Virus record (IMG/VR): IMGVR_UViG_3300024252_000004
Location: 186,001 to 250,000 of that record
DNA length: 64,000 nucleotides
Direction: 5' to 3' (one strand)
In this document: in pieces, positions 3,322 to 25,370 of the stretch
How the letters are laid out: every line of letters starts with the position of its first letter
How positions within the stretch are numbered: position 1 is the stretch's first letter
Notes under the pieces: generated by a model
Told to the model about the DNA's origin: nothing
Database searches by the model: none
What the model saw: the letters and a program-made list of their open reading frames with translations, nothing else
Translations under genes and position numbers: made by a program

Positions 3322-3809
3322 ATGGAATCGTTCTTTTTGACAGAGACCTTGACGAGACTCATTCTTCTAAGGGGAATGAGGAGGTTCTGTTCACCTCGGA
3401 GACTGGCGGAGTAAAGATTAAGTTCTTCTCTTCGGGAACTCTTGAGAGGGCGATTAAATGCTGTGAGCAGCACGGTATGCCTCTTCATATTCTGGTAACC
3501 AGATGGTTTGGATCCAAGGATGCTTTCGCTAAGCATGTGTCAGAGAATGAGACATGGTGGTATGACAAGCTCTACTCCACGAAGGTAAATGTCACACTGC
3601 ACTTGAGCAAGAGACTCTATCATCATCCGGATGGCTTCCTTGACAGGATGGCGAGAGAGTCTCTTGATTTGACACTTCCAACACGGATGTATCTTGGTAG
3701 AGAGCGAGCGATGAGGTTGCAAGACATTCAGACTATGTTGCTGACTAAGGGTTGGTTGACAGTCTCGAATGAGAGCCTTTGGGAAGTGTTGTGTCAGGAG
3801 GATTCTTGA
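3318..3809 (+). CDS. hypothetical protein
   Basis: translationally coupled ORF, 163 aa. Confidence 0.6.
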   Translation: MNGIVLFDRDLDETHSSKGNEEVLFTSETGGVKIKFFSSGTLERAIKCCEQHGMPLHILVTRWFGSKDAFAKHVSENETWWYDKLYSTKVNVTLHLSKRLYHHPDGFLDRMARESLDLTLPTRMYLGRERAMRLQDIQTMLLTKGWLTVSNESLWEVLCQEDS

Positions 3810-20766: not shown

Positions 20767-21162
20767 ATGAAAAGAATAAACAACATTCATTCGTTCGTTG
20801 GAACCGGCGCTTTCCAAACTGGGAAAGAGATGGCTCTTTCGAATGGAGAAGATTTTCATCTGGCGGCATTCCTTAAGCGGAGCAAGTCTCTTATCAGGAT
20901 TGGTGTCAATCGCAATGTCTCTCATGCTCGATTCATTAGGGTTGAGGATGGAGAGGTGTTGTCATTTCTTCATGCTGAAATGGATGCATTGATTGCTGCC
21001 CGTCCTGGCGACACATTGGTTGTCGTTAGATGGACGAAGGGCGGTGAAGTTTCAATGAGTCGTCCTTGCGAACACTGCCAGCGCTTCATTGCGAAGGCTG
21101 GAATCACTCGTGTCATCTATTCTGGATGGAATGGTGACTATTTCTCTGAGAGGTTCATGTGA
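20767..21162 (+). CDS. zinc-dependent cytidine/adenosine deaminase-family protein
   Basis: HAEMDAL and PCEHC motifs. Confidence 0.85.
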   Translation: MKRINNIHSFVGTGAFQTGKEMALSNGEDFHLAAFLKRSKSLIRIGVNRNVSHARFIRVEDGEVLSFLHAEMDALIAARPGDTLVVVRWTKGGEVSMSRPCEHCQRFIAKAGITRVIYSGWNGDYFSERFM

Positions 21163-21800
21163 AAAGAATTGAAATTCTTGGAGACATTCCTCGAAGAGTG
21201 GGTCTTGCATGTTCTGGTGGCGTTGACTCAATGGCGGTTGCTGATTTCCTTATCAAAGGCGGGCGGCAAGTCATTCTGATCAATTTCGATCATGGCACGG
21301 AGTACGGCGGAAGAGCAAGAGAAATGCTCAAGGCGTATTGTGAAGACAAGAATCTTATGAGGGTTTTTCCTAAGACATTCGATCCACCACCCAATGGTGT
21401 ATCTGTCGAAGCTTATTGGCACAAGCTACGGTATGAGTTTTACCGTCACATTGCACAGACAATGAAGCTTGATGCAATCATCACCTGTCATCACTTGGAT
21501 GATCAGGTGGAGACATGGATTATGACAGCAGCGACGGGTAATCCGAGGCTGATTGCTCATAGCAACAACGAGACCAAGGTAATTAGACCCTTTCTTTTGA
21601 CGAGGAAGAGTGTCTTTGAATCGTGGTGTGAAAGAAAGGGGGTTCCTTACCTTGAGGATCCTTCTAACGAAGATACGAAGTACACTCGCAACCTTGTGAG
21701 GCACGAAGTTGTGCCAGCTATGCTGAAGGTTAACCCTGGAATGCATAAGGTTATTGCGAGAAAGGTTAGGGCTGCGTATGATAAACGTAGCGAGCGGTAG
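21159..21800 (+). CDS. tilS: tRNA(Ile)-lysidine synthetase (catalytic domain only)
   Basis: SGGVDS PP-loop, HHLDDQVET, IRPFL, EDPSNEDTKYTRNLVR; adjacent to tRNA(CAU). Confidence 0.9.
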   Translation: MKRIEILGDIPRRVGLACSGGVDSMAVADFLIKGGRQVILINFDHGTEYGGRAREMLKAYCEDKNLMRVFPKTFDPPPNGVSVEAYWHKLRYEFYRHIAQTMKLDAIITCHHLDDQVETWIMTAATGNPRLIAHSNNETKVIRPFLLTRKSVFESWCERKGVPYLEDPSNEDTKYTRNLVRHEVVPAMLKVNPGMHKVIARKVRAAYDKRSER

Positions 21801-21862
21801 ATAAAAATAGTTTAAAAAGAATTGATGGACCATAGCTCAATTGGTTAGAGCAGCAGTCTCAT

Positions 21863-22637
21863 CTGAACCTTGATTTTCGGTTCAAATCTGAGTACAATTT
21901 CCTTACGGAGATTTGTATAATGATTGTGGTCAAGGTAAAGCCAGTCAGAATTCTGAATGGTTATCGTGTAATCTATAATCCTGAATACCACAGGGCCATG
22001 TCCAGTAATAATTGGAGTGGTTATGTTTATGAACATATTGTAGTTGCAGAAGAAATGATAGGCAGAAATTTGAGAGAGGAAGAGGTCGTTCATCATTTAG
22101 ATGGTGATCGTTCTAACAATCGAATAGAAAATCTGCTTGTACTTTCTAATGCTATGCACGCTAAGCTTCATGGTTGGCTTGAAAATGGTGGCGTATTTAA
22201 GGAGACTGAATACGTTAAGAGGGTGAATTCAGAGAAATCTAAGGAAGTAAGAACAATCAATAGGTTTTGCAAAGTCTGCAAAAAAACATTGCAGGCTAAA
22301 GAGAAACTTTATTGCTCAAACAAATGTCGAGGCATCGGAACTCGTAAGGTTGAAAGACCTTCGAGTGAAGAGTTAGCAAAAGACATTGAGAGTATGAGTT
22401 GGCTCGCCATTGGAAGAAAGTATGGTGTTAGCGATAACGCTGTAAGAAAATGGGCAAGGTCTTTTGAGCTTCTATGACAATTCTGAGCCAAGCCAGTCAG
22501 GCGTGACTGGAAGGTGCAACGACTAGTTGGTGTCAGACGAACTTCTGACGTAATACAACATTAGCGCCCTCCACCCTAACGTGTAATGACGAGGGTGATG
22601 ATATAGTCTGCGGAGTTAGGAAACTAACACAAACGGG
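21863..22637 (+). mobile_element. group I intron in tRNA anticodon loop (after CAU), carrying an HNH homing endonuclease
   Basis: 5' exon ends in U, intron ends in G; core motifs AATTCTGAGCCAAG, GGTGCAACGACTAG, GATATAGTC; P3 GAGGGTG/CGCCCTC. Confidence 0.88.
21920..22477 (+). CDS. intron-encoded HNH homing endonuclease with Zn finger and HTH tail
   Basis: YEHIVVAE...VHHLDGDRSNNRIENL...H; CKVC...YCSNKC; IGRKYGVSDNAVRKW. Confidence 0.9.
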   Translation: MIVVKVKPVRILNGYRVIYNPEYHRAMSSNNWSGYVYEHIVVAEEMIGRNLREEEVVHHLDGDRSNNRIENLLVLSNAMHAKLHGWLENGGVFKETEYVKRVNSEKSKEVRTINRFCKVCKKTLQAKEKLYCSNKCRGIGTRKVERPSSEELAKDIESMSWLAIGRKYGVSDNAVRKWARSFELL

Positions 22638-22697
22638 AAACTGCGGGTTGTGGGTTCAAGTCCCACTGGTCCTACCATTTAAAACGGAGTAAGTTCA

Positions 22698-22937
22698 ATG
22701 AGAGTTACAGAAGCACCAGTTGGTGAGATAGACTTTGATTGGACCAACTTCTCTAATGTTTCTATCAAAAGAAGGTTGCCACATTCTTTTTTGCTTAAGT
22801 GTGTTCAAGCACATGAGAGTGGAGAAAGCTATGTCGATCACCTGACGGATGGAGGCAACAGAATTGTAGGAAGATTGACCCCTGAAGGTCATATCGACTA
22901 CATTATTAATCCAGAAGAACACATGGTAAAGGAATAA
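22698..22937 (+). CDS. hypothetical protein
   Basis: GGAG RBS. Confidence 0.55.
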   Translation: MRVTEAPVGEIDFDWTNFSNVSIKRRLPHSFLLKCVQAHESGESYVDHLTDGGNRIVGRLTPEGHIDYIINPEEHMVKE

Positions 22938-23131
22938 GATGTTTAGCGGTAAGACTCAAAGGACTCTTGAGGCTATCATTTGGTTCATGATAGTAGGTGT
23001 ACTTGCATTTATCCTTGTCACGCAGGTCAAAGCCTGCGTCACCTGTGACGATGTGCTTGTAAAGACCATGTGGAATACCTACGCTTGCGTTGACGAATCT
23101 GCTCTAAAGTAGATAAGGGTAAGGAAATCAG

Positions 23132-24646
23132 ATGAAGATTATGAATGCACGGTTTGGTTTCGCTACCAATAGCAGCAGCACGCACAGTGTGATCGTACTA
23201 CCTGAAGGCACACCTATGCCTGCCACAGACGAGTGGGAGAGTTTTGGGTGGCAATACTTCACTGCCGCTGACGAGGAGTCTAAGCGTAAGTATGCAATGC
23301 TTACTATTCAGAGCACAATCCGTAGGGTGCTGAGTAAATCCGGTCTATTTAACTGGCAGGACAAAGGTGATATGTCATCTTACCTGATGAATGCATGGTT
23401 TGATGCAGGTATAGACCTTGAGAACTATGACCGCTATACGAACATGGAAGGTAGCATTGACCACCAGTCTTTGACTGGTTTGCCGATGCGTTGGGACGGA
23501 AAGATGATTGACATTCCATTCGCTAAGGCGTTCATGGATGCAATGGTCAACTCCAATGTTATTATCCTTGGTGGTAATGACAATGATGATCGTACCCATC
23601 CCCTTTCTTATTCGGGAGAGGCTTGGGATCTTATCGAGAAAGCGAATCTGCCCCTTGATGGCCTTTCTTCAAACGTTGTTAGGTTCGATGCAGAATACAA
23701 CTACTGGACCTCATTCAATAGAAGTAATGGGGCCAAGCTAAGGTTCCGTATCTCTGGCGATGAGCCTATTGAGAAGTCTTCATACCCTGAGCTTGTAGAC
23801 ATTAAGATTACGGATATGTGTCCGTATGCGTGTGCGTTCTGTTACATGGGCAGTACGAGTTCTGGCCTTCATGCGAAGGCAGAGACCGTCAATGCTTTCA
23901 TCAGAGAGCTTTCGAGTAAGAATGTTTTTGAGATTGCCATTGGTGGCGGAGAGCCAACGATGCATCCGTACTTCGTTTCGATTCTGAAGTATGCAAGACT
24001 CAATAACATTGTTCCGAATTTTACCACGAAGAATCTTTCGTGGCTCAGAGATCCTACTCAGTGGGTAGATATCATTCGGGAGTGTGGAGCATTCGCTTAC
24101 TCTGCGGACTCTAAGAAGGACGTAGTAAATCTTGTGAGCCTGCTTGATACCAATGGTATCTCTCGTAGCAAGGCGACCATCCAGATTATTCCAGAAGTCC
24201 TAAGTACGTGGGCTCTTGACGGCATCCTTCGTGAGGCCGGGAGTTATGGTATGACTGTGACTCTTCTTGGTTATAAGACAACCGGAAGAGGTGCAGAGTA
24301 TGCCGAGAACAAGCTTGACACCGACTGGCTGAGTGTCGTGACAGAGATTCAAGAAGAGGGTTCGAAGCTTCCGAGGATTGGTATTGATACTATCCTTGCA
24401 GCAAGCACAGACCTATCGGATTTTGATCCTAAGCTTTACACTCTTGAGGAGGGTAAGTTCAGCATGTATATTGATGCCGTAGGTGTCAAGGCTGGTCCGA
24501 GTTCCTTTGCGAATGAGGATGAGTTTGTTAGTCTTGGTGAGAAGCCAAGATACGCTGGATATCCAAAGCCTGGATACGTTACAGAGCTTAAGCTCCCCCA
24601 TAATGATTGGAATGATTCACTCTGGGAAGCGTTTCGTTCCTACTAG
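23132..24646 (+). CDS. radical SAM protein with N-terminal GFATNSSS domain
   Basis: CPYACAFC, GGGEP motifs. Confidence 0.88.
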   Translation: MKIMNARFGFATNSSSTHSVIVLPEGTPMPATDEWESFGWQYFTAADEESKRKYAMLTIQSTIRRVLSKSGLFNWQDKGDMSSYLMNAWFDAGIDLENYDRYTNMEGSIDHQSLTGLPMRWDGKMIDIPFAKAFMDAMVNSNVIILGGNDNDDRTHPLSYSGEAWDLIEKANLPLDGLSSNVVRFDAEYNYWTSFNRSNGAKLRFRISGDEPIEKSSYPELVDIKITDMCPYACAFCYMGSTSSGLHAKAETVNAFIRELSSKNVFEIAIGGGEPTMHPYFVSILKYARLNNIVPNFTTKNLSWLRDPTQWVDIIRECGAFAYSADSKKDVVNLVSLLDTNGISRSKATIQIIPEVLSTWALDGILREAGSYGMTVTLLGYKTTGRGAEYAENKLDTDWLSVVTEIQEEGSKLPRIGIDTILAASTDLSDFDPKLYTLEEGKFSMYIDAVGVKAGPSSFANEDEFVSLGEKPRYAGYPKPGYVTELKLPHNDWNDSLWEAFRSY

Positions 24647-25236: not shown

Positions 25237-25370
25237 TATCTGTTCATCATCACAAAGCTTACAAGCATAGATAGATCAATTGGTTAGATCATCGGACTAT
25301 TAATCCGAAGGCTGCGGGTTCAATCCCCGTTCCTTGCAACAAAAACCCAGCTTTGTACCTCGAACAGATA
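25237..25370 (+). ncRNA. chimeric tRNA-like RNA B (Y RNA-like): module replaces the acceptor stem
   Basis: TATCTGTTC/GAACAGATA and ACAAAGCT/AGCTTTGT stems with ATCATC/ACCTC loop, TACAAGCA, then full D, anticodon (ATT) and T arms. Confidence 0.78.

What the first reader, a model, noticed from the sequence alone, without database searches (positions are those of the whole stretch)
21826..22677. Phage tRNA(CAU) with a group I intron whose HNH ORF runs through the ribozyme core
Seen: the intron lies after anticodon CAU. P3 5' strand (GAGGGTG, 22219) and P4 5' strand (TTCAGA, 22228) fall inside the HNH coding sequence and pair with CGCCCTC (22565) and TCTGAG (22482), so the ORF spans two peripheral loops and the core between them. 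The tRNA sits directly after tilS. Established: the Azoarcus tRNA-Ile(CAU) intron uses this site but has no ORF. Inference: translation and splicing would be mutually exclusive here.
Basis: partly seen in the sequence, partly recalled or inferred. Interest (0 to 1): 0.62.

Follow-up and report, generated by a model that had tools for sequence, protein, structure and literature searches.

The report
Phage tRNA intron with threaded nuclease gene
A marine jumbo phage carries a tRNA(CAU) gene split by a self-splicing group I intron, and the intron's HNH nuclease gene runs straight through half of the ribozyme core; the same layout is conserved in many related phages and I found no published description of it.

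Summary
Window 21826-22677 is a tRNA(CAU) gene with exons 21826-21862 and 22638-22677. It lies 25 nt after a short tilS gene in a 395-kb marine phage genome. A 775-nt group I intron (21863-22637; Rfam 72.2 bits against a cut-off of 50) splits it after the anticodon.

The intact 185-aa HNH gene (21920-22477) starts in the P1 loop. It reads through the internal guide sequence, P2 and the 5' strands of P3, P4 and P5, and it ends in the 3' strand of P5.

Twelve different phage contigs share this layout, and two Klebsiella jumbo phages carry ORF-less versions. Covariation supports every helix (P3: 97 of 98 cells paired; P4: 84 of 84). Third-codon positions are frozen only where the gene overlaps the core (0.89 against 0.68).

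The overlap encodes a predicted disordered linker between the two protein domains.

A conserved promoter-like site inside the intron, and a hairpin that hides the ribosome-binding site, suggest control like that of T4 td/I-TevI. This is inferred, not shown.

Related phages have intronless tilS-tRNA(CAU) alleles. A 2014 review says no phage intron was then known in a tRNA gene, and I found no later report.

Verdict: a new variant of a known kind.

The parts
21159..21800 (+). Short tilS-like gene (213 aa; PP-loop N-terminal domain only)
   Evidence: TIGR02432 scores 116.7 bits against a cut-off of 93.6. Homologues in L008-L010 are followed directly by an intronless tRNA(CAU).
21754..21782 (+). 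Promoter-like site upstream of the tRNA (TTGCGA-17-TATGAT); weak evidence
   Evidence: Consensus scan, 9 of 12 matches. L008 has TTGACA-17-TATAAT at the equivalent place, read.
21826..21862 (+). tRNA(CAU) 5' exon, ending with anticodon CAU
   Evidence: Aligns with intronless homologues.
21863..22637 (+). Group I intron, 775 nt; terminal G (omega-G) at 22637
   Evidence: RF00028 at 72.2 bits. ARAGORN gives the same intron length. A terminal G is invariant in 14 homologues.
21864..21884 (+). Hairpin at the start of L1 (UGAACC/GGUUCA)
   Evidence: RNAfold predicts it in 5 of the 12 homologue leaders folded: the window, L015, L016, L017 and, more weakly, L019.
21870..21898 (+). Sigma-70-like promoter inside the intron (TTGATT-17-TACAAT)
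   Evidence: Found by the consensus scan. The same element sits at +7/+8 from the 5' splice site in L015, L016, L017, L019 and L023. Its function is inferred.
21892..21918 (+). Hairpin that pairs the -10 box with the Shine-Dalgarno GGAG (21907-21910)
   Evidence: dG -9.1 kcal/mol, z -3.66, 0 of 200 shuffles fold as well. Conserved in 5 sequences; 4 pairs keep pairing through changes on both sides.
21920..22477 (+). HNH homing-endonuclease ORF (185 aa): HNH domain in L1, disordered linker over the core, Zn-ribbon plus helical domain in L5
   Evidence: Codon-position conservation is 0.88/0.91/0.68 in the loop parts.
22187..22191 (+). Internal guide sequence GGUGG (P1 3' strand). It pairs with exon U33-C34-A35-U36 and intron nucleotide 1; U21862-G22188 is the wobble pair
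   Evidence: The U-G pair is invariant in 14 sequences. The intron nt 1 / guide pair is C-G in most, U-G in L021 and G-C in L012, all canonical. L019 has A (intron nt 1) with U in the guide by reading the sequences, but its 5' exon was misaligned in the automated count.
22192..22214 (+). P2 hairpin, entirely coding (V-F-K-E-T-E-Y)
   Evidence: The helix is replaced by different complementary helices in L021, L023, L025, L027, L028, L034 and L047.
22219..22225 (+). P3 5' strand (inside the ORF)
   Evidence: Pairs with 22565-22571. 97 of 98 cells canonical.
22229..22234 (+). P4 5' strand (inside the ORF); J3/4 AAU at 22226-28
   Evidence: Pairs with 22481-22486. 84 of 84 cells canonical.
22238..22248 (+). 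P5/P5a 5' strand (inside the ORF)
   Evidence: Pairs with 22468-22477. 36 of 42 and 56 of 72 cells canonical.
22468..22486 (+). P5a and P5 3' strands (including stop codon UGA 22475-77), J5/4 CAA, P4 3' strand
22487..22515 (+). P6/P6a
   Evidence: P6a 98 of 98 cells canonical, with up to 5 pair types.
22521..22525 (+). P7 5' strand GACUA (pairs with 22604-22608)
   Evidence: 70 of 70 cells canonical. Matches the Rfam consensus.
22526..22559 (+). Two helices between P7 and P3' (P7.1/P7.2-like)
   Evidence: P7.2 64 of 66 cells canonical. An insertion relative to the Rfam model.
22565..22571 (+). P3 3' strand
22572..22597 (+). P8
   Evidence: 77 of 82 cells canonical.
22604..22608 (+). P7 3' strand UAGUC, preceded by J8/7 AUGAUA
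22615..22628 (+). P9 with a GAAA tetraloop
   Evidence: 68 of 70 cells canonical.
22638..22677 (+). tRNA(CAU) 3' exon, with encoded CCA

Best explanation
This is a mobile group I intron with peripheral helices typical of phage (IA-type) introns. It sits between positions 36 and 37 of a phage tRNA(CAU) gene that is most likely tRNA-Ile2, the substrate of the neighbouring phage TilS.

Shown by sequence and comparison:
- The ribozyme is complete: P1-P9, a U-G wobble at the 5' splice site, and a terminal G.
- Its HNH gene is threaded through it. The catalytic HNH domain is encoded in the roughly 320-nt P1 loop. The Zn-ribbon and helical DNA-binding domain is encoded in the P5 loop.
- The roughly 20 codons between them, a predicted disordered linker, are at the same time the internal guide sequence, P2 and the 5' strands of P3, P4 and P5.
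- The layout is conserved and under double selection in at least 12 distinct phage contigs.

Inferred:
- Pre-tRNA made from the upstream promoter folds with its ribosome-binding site locked in a hairpin. It is therefore not translated and can self-splice with GTP to give the tRNA.
- A second transcript starts at a conserved sigma-70-like promoter just inside the intron. It begins in the loop of that hairpin, so it has a free ribosome-binding site and no 5' splice site, and it serves as the nuclease mRNA. This is the solution known from T4 td/I-TevI.
- The nuclease then cuts intronless tRNA(CAU) alleles of co-infecting relatives and the intron is copied in.
For: - Ribozyme: RF00028 at 72.2 bits.
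- Exon join: gives the same CUCAUAA loop as the intronless homologues.
- Family: 12 ORF-bearing and 2 ORF-less homologues sit at the same tRNA(CAU) site.
- Covariation: seen in P1, P2, P3, P4, P6a, P7.2, P8 and P9.
- Guide sequence: the ORF-less introns of Klebsiella phages align collinearly with 22184-22248 and 22474-22637. This places the guide sequence at 22187-91 and shows that L1 and L5 are the two insertions.
- Double selection: third-codon conservation is 0.68-0.69 in the loop parts and 0.89 in the core part.
- Protein: AlphaFold gives two confident domains and pLDDT below 50 for residues 94-107, which map to 22199-22240. The best fold match is I-HmuI, and it is weak.
- Control elements: internal promoter-like site, conserved in six sequences; SD-sequestering hairpin with z -3.66 and compensatory changes.
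- Mobility: intronless tilS-tRNA(CAU) alleles in L008-L010.
- Assembly: independent seawater metagenome contigs bridge tilS, exon 1 and intron, and intron, exon 2 and downstream DNA.
Against: - No RNA data exist, so splicing, the internal transcription start and nuclease activity are all untested.
- The promoter match is only 9 of 12, and such matches are not rare in this region (7 found against 3.6 expected). It is missing or unclear in L021, L025, L027, L028, L034 and L047.
- No intronless allele of this same phage was seen in four metagenomes.
- The window's tRNA has a U1-U72 mismatch.
- Ile2 identity rests on tilS synteny, on the genome holding two further CAU tRNAs, and on a weak E. coli match (E 0.2).
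- How a contiguous two-domain gene came to lie in two loops is unexplained.
Confidence: 0.8

Rival explanations
1. There is no dedicated control. The nuclease is translated from the same pre-tRNA molecules that must splice, so each molecule either splices or is translated. The promoter-like site and the hairpin would then be incidental.
For: The promoter consensus match is modest and absent in about half of the homologues. No RNA data are available.
Against: The hairpin is significantly stable and keeps pairing through compensatory changes. The promoter-like element sits at the same offset from the splice site in six sequences whose nuclease proteins are only 53-78% identical to the window's.
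Confidence: 0.15
2. The host tRNA is an elongator tRNA-Met rather than tRNA-Ile2, and the adjacency to tilS is coincidental.
For: ARAGORN calls it Met from the anticodon alone. The sequence matches to annotated tRNA-Ile are weak. The best phage matches include tRNA-Lys.
Against: The tilS then tRNA(CAU) order recurs in L008, L009, L010 and L015. The genome has two other CAU tRNAs. AUA makes up 13.8% of Ile codons.
Confidence: 0.22
3. The true P3 and P4 use strands outside the ORF. For example, the P3 3' strand would pair with the identical heptamer at 22591-97. The ORF would then lie in one large loop and would not overlap the core.
For: GAGGGUG occurs twice, at 22219 and at 22591. Both copies give 7 of 7 pairs with 22565-71.
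Against: The alternative pairing fails in L016, L019, L021 and L023, while P3 (97 of 98) and P8 (77 of 82) covary. The ORF-less Klebsiella phage introns have P3-P4-P5 in the same order directly after the guide sequence and P2. No six-pair partner of the P4 3' strand lies upstream of the ORF; the one in the 3' part (22616) is the P9 5' strand, which has its own covarying partner.
Confidence: 0.03
4. The intron can no longer splice, and the interrupted tRNA is a pseudogene kept only as a carrier of the nuclease gene.
For: U1-U72 mismatch in the acceptor stem. No RNA evidence.
Against: All core helices, the U-G wobble, the terminal G and the J8/7 and P7 consensus are kept across 14 diverged sequences. 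The tRNA anticodon stem itself covaries across the split (64 of 70 cells).
Confidence: 0.05

Closest known systems
[quoted passage not shown]
   Same: A self-splicing group I intron in the anticodon loop of a tRNA-Ile(CAU) gene. P1 is formed by the anticodon-loop nucleotides (PMC13168695).
   Different: The Azoarcus intron is 205 nt, has no ORF, and is bacterial. Here the intron is 775 nt, carries an HNH gene, has extra helices between P7 and P3' and a roughly 320-nt P1 loop, and lies in a phage genome. The two were not aligned directly, so shared ancestry is untested.
Phage T4 td intron with I-TevI
   Same: A phage group I intron whose endonuclease ORF overlaps ribozyme sequence. Translation must be kept away from splicing precursors (PMC3984707, citing Gibb and Edgell 2010). 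From my own knowledge, in T4 the ribosome-binding site is sequestered in early transcripts and freed in transcripts that start at an internal late promoter. The window shows an analogous hairpin and promoter-like site.
   Different: The T4 host gene encodes a protein, the nuclease is GIY-YIG, and the ORF sits in one loop (P6a) with only its end reaching the core. Here the host is a tRNA gene, the nuclease is HNH, and the ORF crosses the guide sequence, P2, P3, P4 and P5.
I-HmuI (Bacillus phage SPO1 DNA polymerase intron HNH endonuclease; PDB 1U3E)
   Same: It is the best structural match of the predicted N-terminal domain (Foldseek probability 0.96, 89 columns). It is an HNH homing endonuclease encoded in a phage group I intron.
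   Different: The match is weak (E 0.08, 20% identity). There is no sequence-level hit to any solved structure. The host gene and the position of the ORF differ.
Cyanobacterial tRNA-fMet(CAU) intron with I-Ssp6803I
   Same: An endonuclease-bearing group I intron in the anticodon loop of a CAU tRNA gene (Bonocora and Shub 2001, cited in PMC3984707).
   Different: It is bacterial. From my own knowledge its nuclease belongs to the PD-(D/E)XK family. It is not a phage element, and no threaded ORF has been described for it.
ORF-less tRNA(CAU) introns in Klebsiella jumbo phages (Muenster MT708547.1; OU509535.1)
   Same: Same insertion site and a homologous core: RF00028 at 104 and 90 bits, collinear from guide sequence to P5 and from P5' to P9.
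   Different: They have no ORF; L1 and L5 are short loops. The Muenster record annotates neither the tRNA nor the intron. I found no paper that describes them.

Membership tests
Group I intron (Rfam RF00028) | Covariance-model score above the curated gathering score | tested here: met
   72.2 bits against 50, E 2e-16.
Group I intron (Rfam RF00028) | Conserved core helices P3-P8 supported by covariation, including the P3/P7 pseudoknot | tested here: met
   Canonical cells across 14 sequences: P3 97/98, P4 84/84, P6a 98/98, P7 70/70, P8 77/82.
Group I intron (Rfam RF00028) | U-G wobble at the 5' splice site in P1, and a terminal G at the 3' end | tested here: met
   U21862-G22188 is invariant in 14 sequences. 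G22637 aligns with a G in all 14.
Group I intron (Rfam RF00028) | Guanosine-dependent self-splicing | not testable with these tools
   No RNA runs hold this sequence. Needs an in vitro assay.
Subgroup IA (phage-type) group I introns | Extra helices P7.1/P7.2 between P7 and the P3 3' strand | tested here: met
   There is a 37-nt insert at 22526-22562 relative to the Rfam model. The inner helix is canonical in 64 of 66 cells. The definition of the subgroup comes from PMC3984707 and my own knowledge. No formal subgroup classifier was run.
Azoarcus-type (IC3) tRNA-Ile intron | Same insertion site (after the anticodon, in the anticodon loop) | tested here: met
   The site lies between U36 and A37. 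For Azoarcus, PMC13168695 confirms only 'anticodon loop', with exon lengths compatible with this position.
Azoarcus-type (IC3) tRNA-Ile intron | Compact IC3 architecture and sequence homology | not tested
   No Azoarcus sequence was on hand for alignment. The presence of P7.1/P7.2-like helices argues against membership.
HNH homing endonuclease (Pfam PF13392 HNH_3; PHROG 15471) | HNH motif and a full-length family match | tested here: met
   phrog_15471 at E 2.7e-37 over residues 10-182. PF13392 is recorded on the homologues. H58, H59, N67, N71 and H80 are invariant.
HNH homing endonuclease (Pfam PF13392 HNH_3; PHROG 15471) | Presence/absence polymorphism of the element at one conserved target site | tested here: met
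   Intronless alleles in L008-L010, ORF-less introns in L012 and L013, and ORF-bearing introns in 12 loci, all at CAU|AA.
HNH homing endonuclease (Pfam PF13392 HNH_3; PHROG 15471) | Site-specific cleavage of the intronless allele | not testable with these tools
   Needs purified protein and a substrate.
TilS (tRNA-Ile lysidine synthetase) | N-terminal PP-loop domain above the curated cut-off | tested here: met
   TIGR02432 at 116.7 bits against 93.6. The full-length model NF007942 is far below its cut-off (60 against 606), so the C-terminal domains are absent.
tRNA-Ile2 (CAU, lysidine-modified) | CAU anticodon, with identity elements recognised by TilS and IleRS | tested here: inconclusive
   CAU anticodon and tilS synteny. 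It is the third CAU tRNA in the genome. The best full-length E. coli match is annotated tRNA-Ile but at E 0.2.
T4 td/I-TevI-type translational control | Ribosome-binding site sequestered in the precursor | tested here: met
   Hairpin 21892-21918 with z -3.66. It is conserved with compensatory changes.
T4 td/I-TevI-type translational control | An internal promoter whose transcript starts inside the hairpin | tested here: inconclusive
   TTGATT-17-TACAAT at 21870-21898. A comparable element was found in 6 of 12 homologues. The transcription start is not mapped.

The most novel reading that the evidence does not exclude
This window would be one member of a large, so far undescribed class of mobile group I introns that home into the anticodon loop of phage-encoded tRNA(CAU)/tRNA-Ile2 genes. 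In this class an HNH nuclease and the ribozyme are obligatorily co-encoded. The disordered inter-domain linker of the protein is the guide sequence, P2 and the P3-P5 5' half of the catalytic core, with the two protein domains housed in two different loops. If so, phage tRNA genes are a regular habitat of group I introns, contrary to the 2014 review. The element would also be a natural example of about 60 nt that serve as both protein linker and ribozyme core. Maturation of the AUA-decoding tRNA may in addition be gated by splicing.
Probability: 0.5. Interest if true: 0.65.

Novelty: new variant of a known kind. Interest (0 to 1): 0.58.

Why it matters
- **Phage tRNA genes as intron hosts.** The review literature states that every phage group I intron then known sits in a protein-coding gene, despite the many phage tRNA genes (PMC3984707). 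This locus and its relatives show that phage tRNA(CAU) genes are a recurrent target. At least 12 ORF-bearing contigs were checked at the DNA level. ORF-less copies occur in cultured Klebsiella jumbo phages. Ninety-three of the 120 best protein clusters carry the N-S footprint of J3/4-P4.
- **Dual coding.** About 60 nt must fold as half of a ribozyme core and also encode a protein linker. The frozen synonymous sites are the measurable signature.
- **Annotation.** tRNA finders miss these genes. The Muenster record leaves its copy unannotated, and nuclease-gene callers label the ORF as free-standing.
- **Tractability.** The cultured Klebsiella phages carry a homologous ORF-less intron, so self-splicing can be tested there directly.
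- **Biology.** The intron sits in a gene needed, together with the phage TilS, to read AUA codons. Splicing could therefore limit phage translation.

Tried and rejected
1. **Proximal guide sequence.** GUGG at 21926, right after the start codon, pairs with the exon in the window. It is not conserved in homologues, so it was rejected in favour of 22187-91.
2. **Alternative P3 or P4 partners outside the ORF**. The P8 3' strand could replace the P3 5' strand in the window clade only. It was rejected on covariation.
3. **T-arm mimic in L1.** The 'GGUUCRAAU' stretch looked like a T-loop, but the flanking stem is not kept in L015 or L016. Not pursued.
4. **Solved structures.** The sequence search with the family profile found nothing at E 0.01 or better. 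Foldseek against the PDB gave only a weak I-HmuI match.
5. **Expression evidence.** All 24 runs that hold the sequence are DNA seawater metagenomes. Laying four of them showed no intronless allele of this phage. It showed only unrelated, abundant tRNA(CAU) genes whose similarity stops exactly at 21862.
6. **Literature.** Seven searches for phage tRNA introns found none that describes one. Closed-access papers could not be searched.
7. **PHROG scan of large neighbouring ORFs.** It gave ligase and nucleotidyltransferase hits but no structural hallmark gene inside the window. The phage assignment rests on the IMG/VR record and its CheckV estimate.
8. **Not run.** The large representative protein search, the complex prediction and a custom covariance model were not needed.
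Full report
**Where the window lies.** The window is bases 186001-250000 of a 395,127-bp IMG/VR virus record that CheckV rates complete. The DNA recurs in many seawater metagenomes. The genome carries 44 tRNA genes by the standard ARAGORN scan, and 47 when introns are allowed.

**Checking the observation.** Rfam places a group I intron at 22170-22630 with 72.2 bits against a gathering score of 50. It is the only such hit in the genome.
- Reading the sequence, the 5' half of a tRNA runs from 21826 to the anticodon CAU at 21860-62. The 3' half runs from 22638 to an encoded CCA at 22675-77.
- Joining the halves gives a normal 77-nt cloverleaf with loop CUCAUAA. ARAGORN with introns allowed finds the same outer ends and a 775-nt intron.
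- The ORF 21920-22477 (185 aa) matches PHROG 15471 'HNH endonuclease' from end to end (E 3e-37).
- The ORF 21159-21800 passes the curated cut-off of the TilS N-terminal domain model (116.7 against 93.6 bits). It ends 25 nt before the tRNA.

**Anatomy of the ribozyme.** The key comparison came from a weak BLAST hit to Klebsiella jumbo phages.
- Phage Muenster and record OU509535.1 each hold a tRNA(CAU) gene split at the same place by an ORF-less intron of about 230 nt. RF00028 scores them at 104 and 90 bits. The Muenster record annotates neither the tRNA nor the intron.
- These short introns align collinearly with two blocks of the window intron, 22184-22248 and 22474-22637.
- This fixes the internal guide sequence at GGUGG, 22187-22191. 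It pairs with exon U33-C34-A35-U36 and the first intron base.
- The U-G wobble at the splice site is invariant in 14 sequences. The neighbouring pair (intron nt 1 with the guide) is C-G in most, U-G in L021 and G-C in L012. In L019 the sequences read A opposite U, but that row was misaligned in the automated count.
- A nearer candidate guide at 21926 is not conserved and was rejected.
- The order of elements is therefore: 5' splice site; L1 of about 320 nt; guide sequence; P2 (22192-22214); P3; J3/4 AAU; P4; P5/P5a; L5 of about 220 nt; P5'; P4'; P6/P6a; P7; two helices between P7 and P3'; P3'; P8; P7'; P9 with a GAAA loop; terminal G at 22637.

**The ORF is threaded through the core.**
- The HNH domain (residues 1-89) is encoded in L1.
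- Residues 90-110 are encoded by the guide sequence, P2 and the 5' strands of P3, P4 and P5.
- The remainder, a CxxC...CxxxC ribbon and a helical domain, is encoded in L5.
- The stop codon lies in the P5 3' strand.
- AlphaFold with a 13-sequence alignment gives two confident domains. pLDDT falls below 50 exactly for residues 94-107, which map to 22199-22240. The ribozyme strands are thus carried in a predicted disordered linker.

**The layout is conserved.**
- The protein search found 647 relatives.
- I fetched DNA for homologues at 53-78% protein identity and for the best IMG/VR loci.
- Each of the twelve distinct loci I examined sits in a group I intron after CAU of a tRNA(CAU) gene. In eleven of them the Rfam hit begins about 200-270 nt inside the ORF; L017 gave no hit of its own, but L018 encodes the same protein and did.
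- Relatives below about 47% identity have no Rfam group I hit and lie among phage tRNA genes as apparently free-standing genes.

**Covariation.** I counted pairs on a MAFFT alignment of 14 sequences.

| Helix | Canonical cells |
|---|---|
| P3 | 97/98 (up to five pair types at a position) |
| P4 | 84/84 |
| P6a | 98/98 |
| P7 | 70/70 |
| P7.2 | 64/66 |
| P8 | 77/82 |
| P9 | 68/70 |

P2 is replaced by entirely different complementary helices, several with GNRA loops, while encoding different amino acids. The tRNA anticodon stem also covaries across the split (64/70).

**Double selection on the overlap.** In the five closest sequences the majority fraction at codon positions 1, 2 and 3 is as follows.

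| Part of the ORF | Position 1 | Position 2 | Position 3 |
|---|---|---|---|
| L1 part | 0.88 | 0.91 | 0.68 |
| L5 part | 0.83 | 0.87 | 0.69 |
| Core part | 0.91 | 0.91 | 0.89 |

- The loop parts behave like a protein gene under purifying selection.
- In the overlap the synonymous sites are frozen as well, which is the expected mark of dual use.
- The protein motif (R/G)-V-N-S-x-K-S-K is the translation of P3, J3/4, P4, J4/5 and P5.
- An N-S footprint at that place occurs in 93 of the 120 best protein clusters. This is a proxy, verified on DNA in only 12 loci.

- The heptamer GAGGGUG occurs a second time at 22591-97, where it forms the 3' strand of P8. It could pair with the P3 3' strand.
- That alternative holds only in the window's closest relatives and fails in L016, L019, L021 and L023, while P3 and P8 both covary.
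- No six-pair partner for the P4 3' strand lies upstream of the ORF. The only one in the 3' part of the intron (22616) is the P9 5' strand, which has its own covarying partner.

**How translation and splicing may be kept apart (inferred).**
- A ribosome reading 22187-22248 would unwind P1 through P5, so one RNA molecule cannot do both at once. This idea is established for phage introns whose ORFs reach the core (PMC3984707).
- A sigma-70-like promoter, TTGATT-17-TACAAT, lies at 21870-21898, eight bases inside the intron. The same element at the same offset is present in L015, L016, L017, L019 and L023.
- The -10 box is the 5' strand of a hairpin (21892-21918) whose 3' strand holds the Shine-Dalgarno GGAG. 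The hairpin has dG -9.1 kcal/mol and z -3.66, with 0 of 200 shuffles as stable. It is conserved with compensatory changes.
- A transcript from the upstream promoter would hide its ribosome-binding site and be free to splice. A transcript from the internal promoter would start in the hairpin loop, expose the site, and lack the 5' splice site.
- From my own knowledge this mirrors T4 td/I-TevI.
- The promoter evidence is modest, and the element is not evident in about half of the homologues.

**Identity of the tRNA.**
- In L008, L009 and L010 a tilS homologue is followed directly by an intronless tRNA(CAU). L015 keeps the deaminase, tilS-sized ORF and interrupted tRNA in the same order as the window.
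- The genome has two further CAU tRNAs.
- AUA makes up 13.8% of Ile codons.
- The best full-length E. coli matches are annotated tRNA-Ile, but only at E 0.2.
- I rate tRNA-Ile2 as likely, at about 0.75.
- A U1-U72 mismatch in the window's acceptor stem is unexplained. Relatives have G-C or G-U there.

**Integrity of the assembly.** Contigs from independent seawater metagenomes bridge 20800-22103 and 22212-23324 without differences. Other abundant contigs match only 21830-21862 and then continue as intronless tRNA(CAU) genes of other organisms. Their similarity ends exactly at the predicted splice site.

**Comparison with what is known.**
- Bacterial tRNA-Ile(CAU), tRNA-fMet, tRNA-Leu and tRNA-Arg introns are known.
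- HNH nucleases in phage introns are known.
- Overlap between an intron ORF and the ribozyme core is known (PMC3984707; PMC11878797 mentions overlap and segmented cores in Bastillevirinae introns).
- Phage-encoded TilS has been noted before (PMC6892783).
- What I could not find in the literature is any group I intron in a phage tRNA gene. The 2014 review says all phage introns then known lie in protein-coding genes, and seven searches found no later report.
- I also found no description of an ORF whose two domains sit in L1 and L5 with the linker encoding the guide sequence through P5.
- I therefore rate the finding a new variant of a known kind, with moderate to good interest.
- How the threaded layout arose is unresolved. 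Two insertions, a fusion of two ORFs, or descent of the free-standing genes from intron-borne ones are all possible.

Noticed in passing
This is too short for a group I intron. By eye the extra sequence lies after an intact-looking anticodon arm.
   Followed up: partly
G000:C1:302460-302537 (outside the window): ARAGORN reports a tRNA with anticodon CUA ('Pyl'), which would be an amber suppressor tRNA. Some genes of this phage may read TAG as a sense codon.
   Followed up: no
window 25265-25338 and 28615-28688: A tRNA called Asn with the unusual anticodon AUU, and a tRNA for which ARAGORN cannot define a three-base anticodon.
   Followed up: no
L013:1884-2194 (Klebsiella phage Muenster MT708547.1, about 302826-303136): An unannotated tRNA(CAU) gene interrupted by an ORF-less group I intron (L013:1924-2154; RF00028 at 104 bits). 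OU509535.1 holds a different tRNA(CAU) with a homologous intron.
   Followed up: yes
L003:2820-3575: A tRNA gene appears split. Its 5' part is at about 2820-2856 and its 3' part (T arm, acceptor strand, CCA) at 3541-3575. Between them lie a complete tRNA-Thr and a free-standing HNH relative (45% identity). Rfam finds no group I core there.
   Followed up: partly
L019/L020:2414-3290: The intron-bearing tRNA(CAU) of this relative has a 5' half with no recognisable D arm and a long extra arm in the 3' half. ARAGORN does not call it.
   Followed up: no
L046:578-826; L065-L068, L073, L078, L083, L092 (about 530-870): Other viral contigs hold tRNA genes with introns of about 200-240 nt, next to free-standing HNH relatives. 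ARAGORN calls these tRNA-Leu(UAA). L046 is confirmed by RF00028 at 62.4 bits; the rest rest on ARAGORN and a core motif only.
   Followed up: partly
L014:1158-3016 (Vibrio phage VnaP ON212104.1): Three RF00028 hits (77-91 bits) lie between the pieces annotated as separate 'terminase large subunit' CDSs. The terminase gene is split by three group I introns.
   Followed up: no
window 22565-22597: The P3 3' strand could pair with the P8 3' strand, because GAGGGUG occurs at both 22219 and 22591. Such an alternative fold could form whenever the P3 5' strand is occupied. It is seen only in the window's closest relatives.
   Followed up: partly
window 21826 and 22673: Positions 1 and 72 of the spliced tRNA are U and U, a mismatch at the top of the acceptor stem. 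Relatives have G-C or G-U.
   Followed up: no
window 21879-21888: A 'GGUUCRAAU' stretch resembling a tRNA T-loop is conserved in the P1 loop of most homologues. It overlaps the promoter spacer, and no consistent T-arm stem was found.
   Followed up: partly
window 23132-24646 and 20767-21162: The neighbours of the tilS-tRNA module include a 504-aa radical SAM protein and a small deaminase-like protein. A NinI-like phosphatase and an M50-type metalloprotease lie upstream. L015 keeps the deaminase-like gene and a tilS-sized ORF before the intron; L019 keeps the phosphatase and the protease.
   Followed up: no
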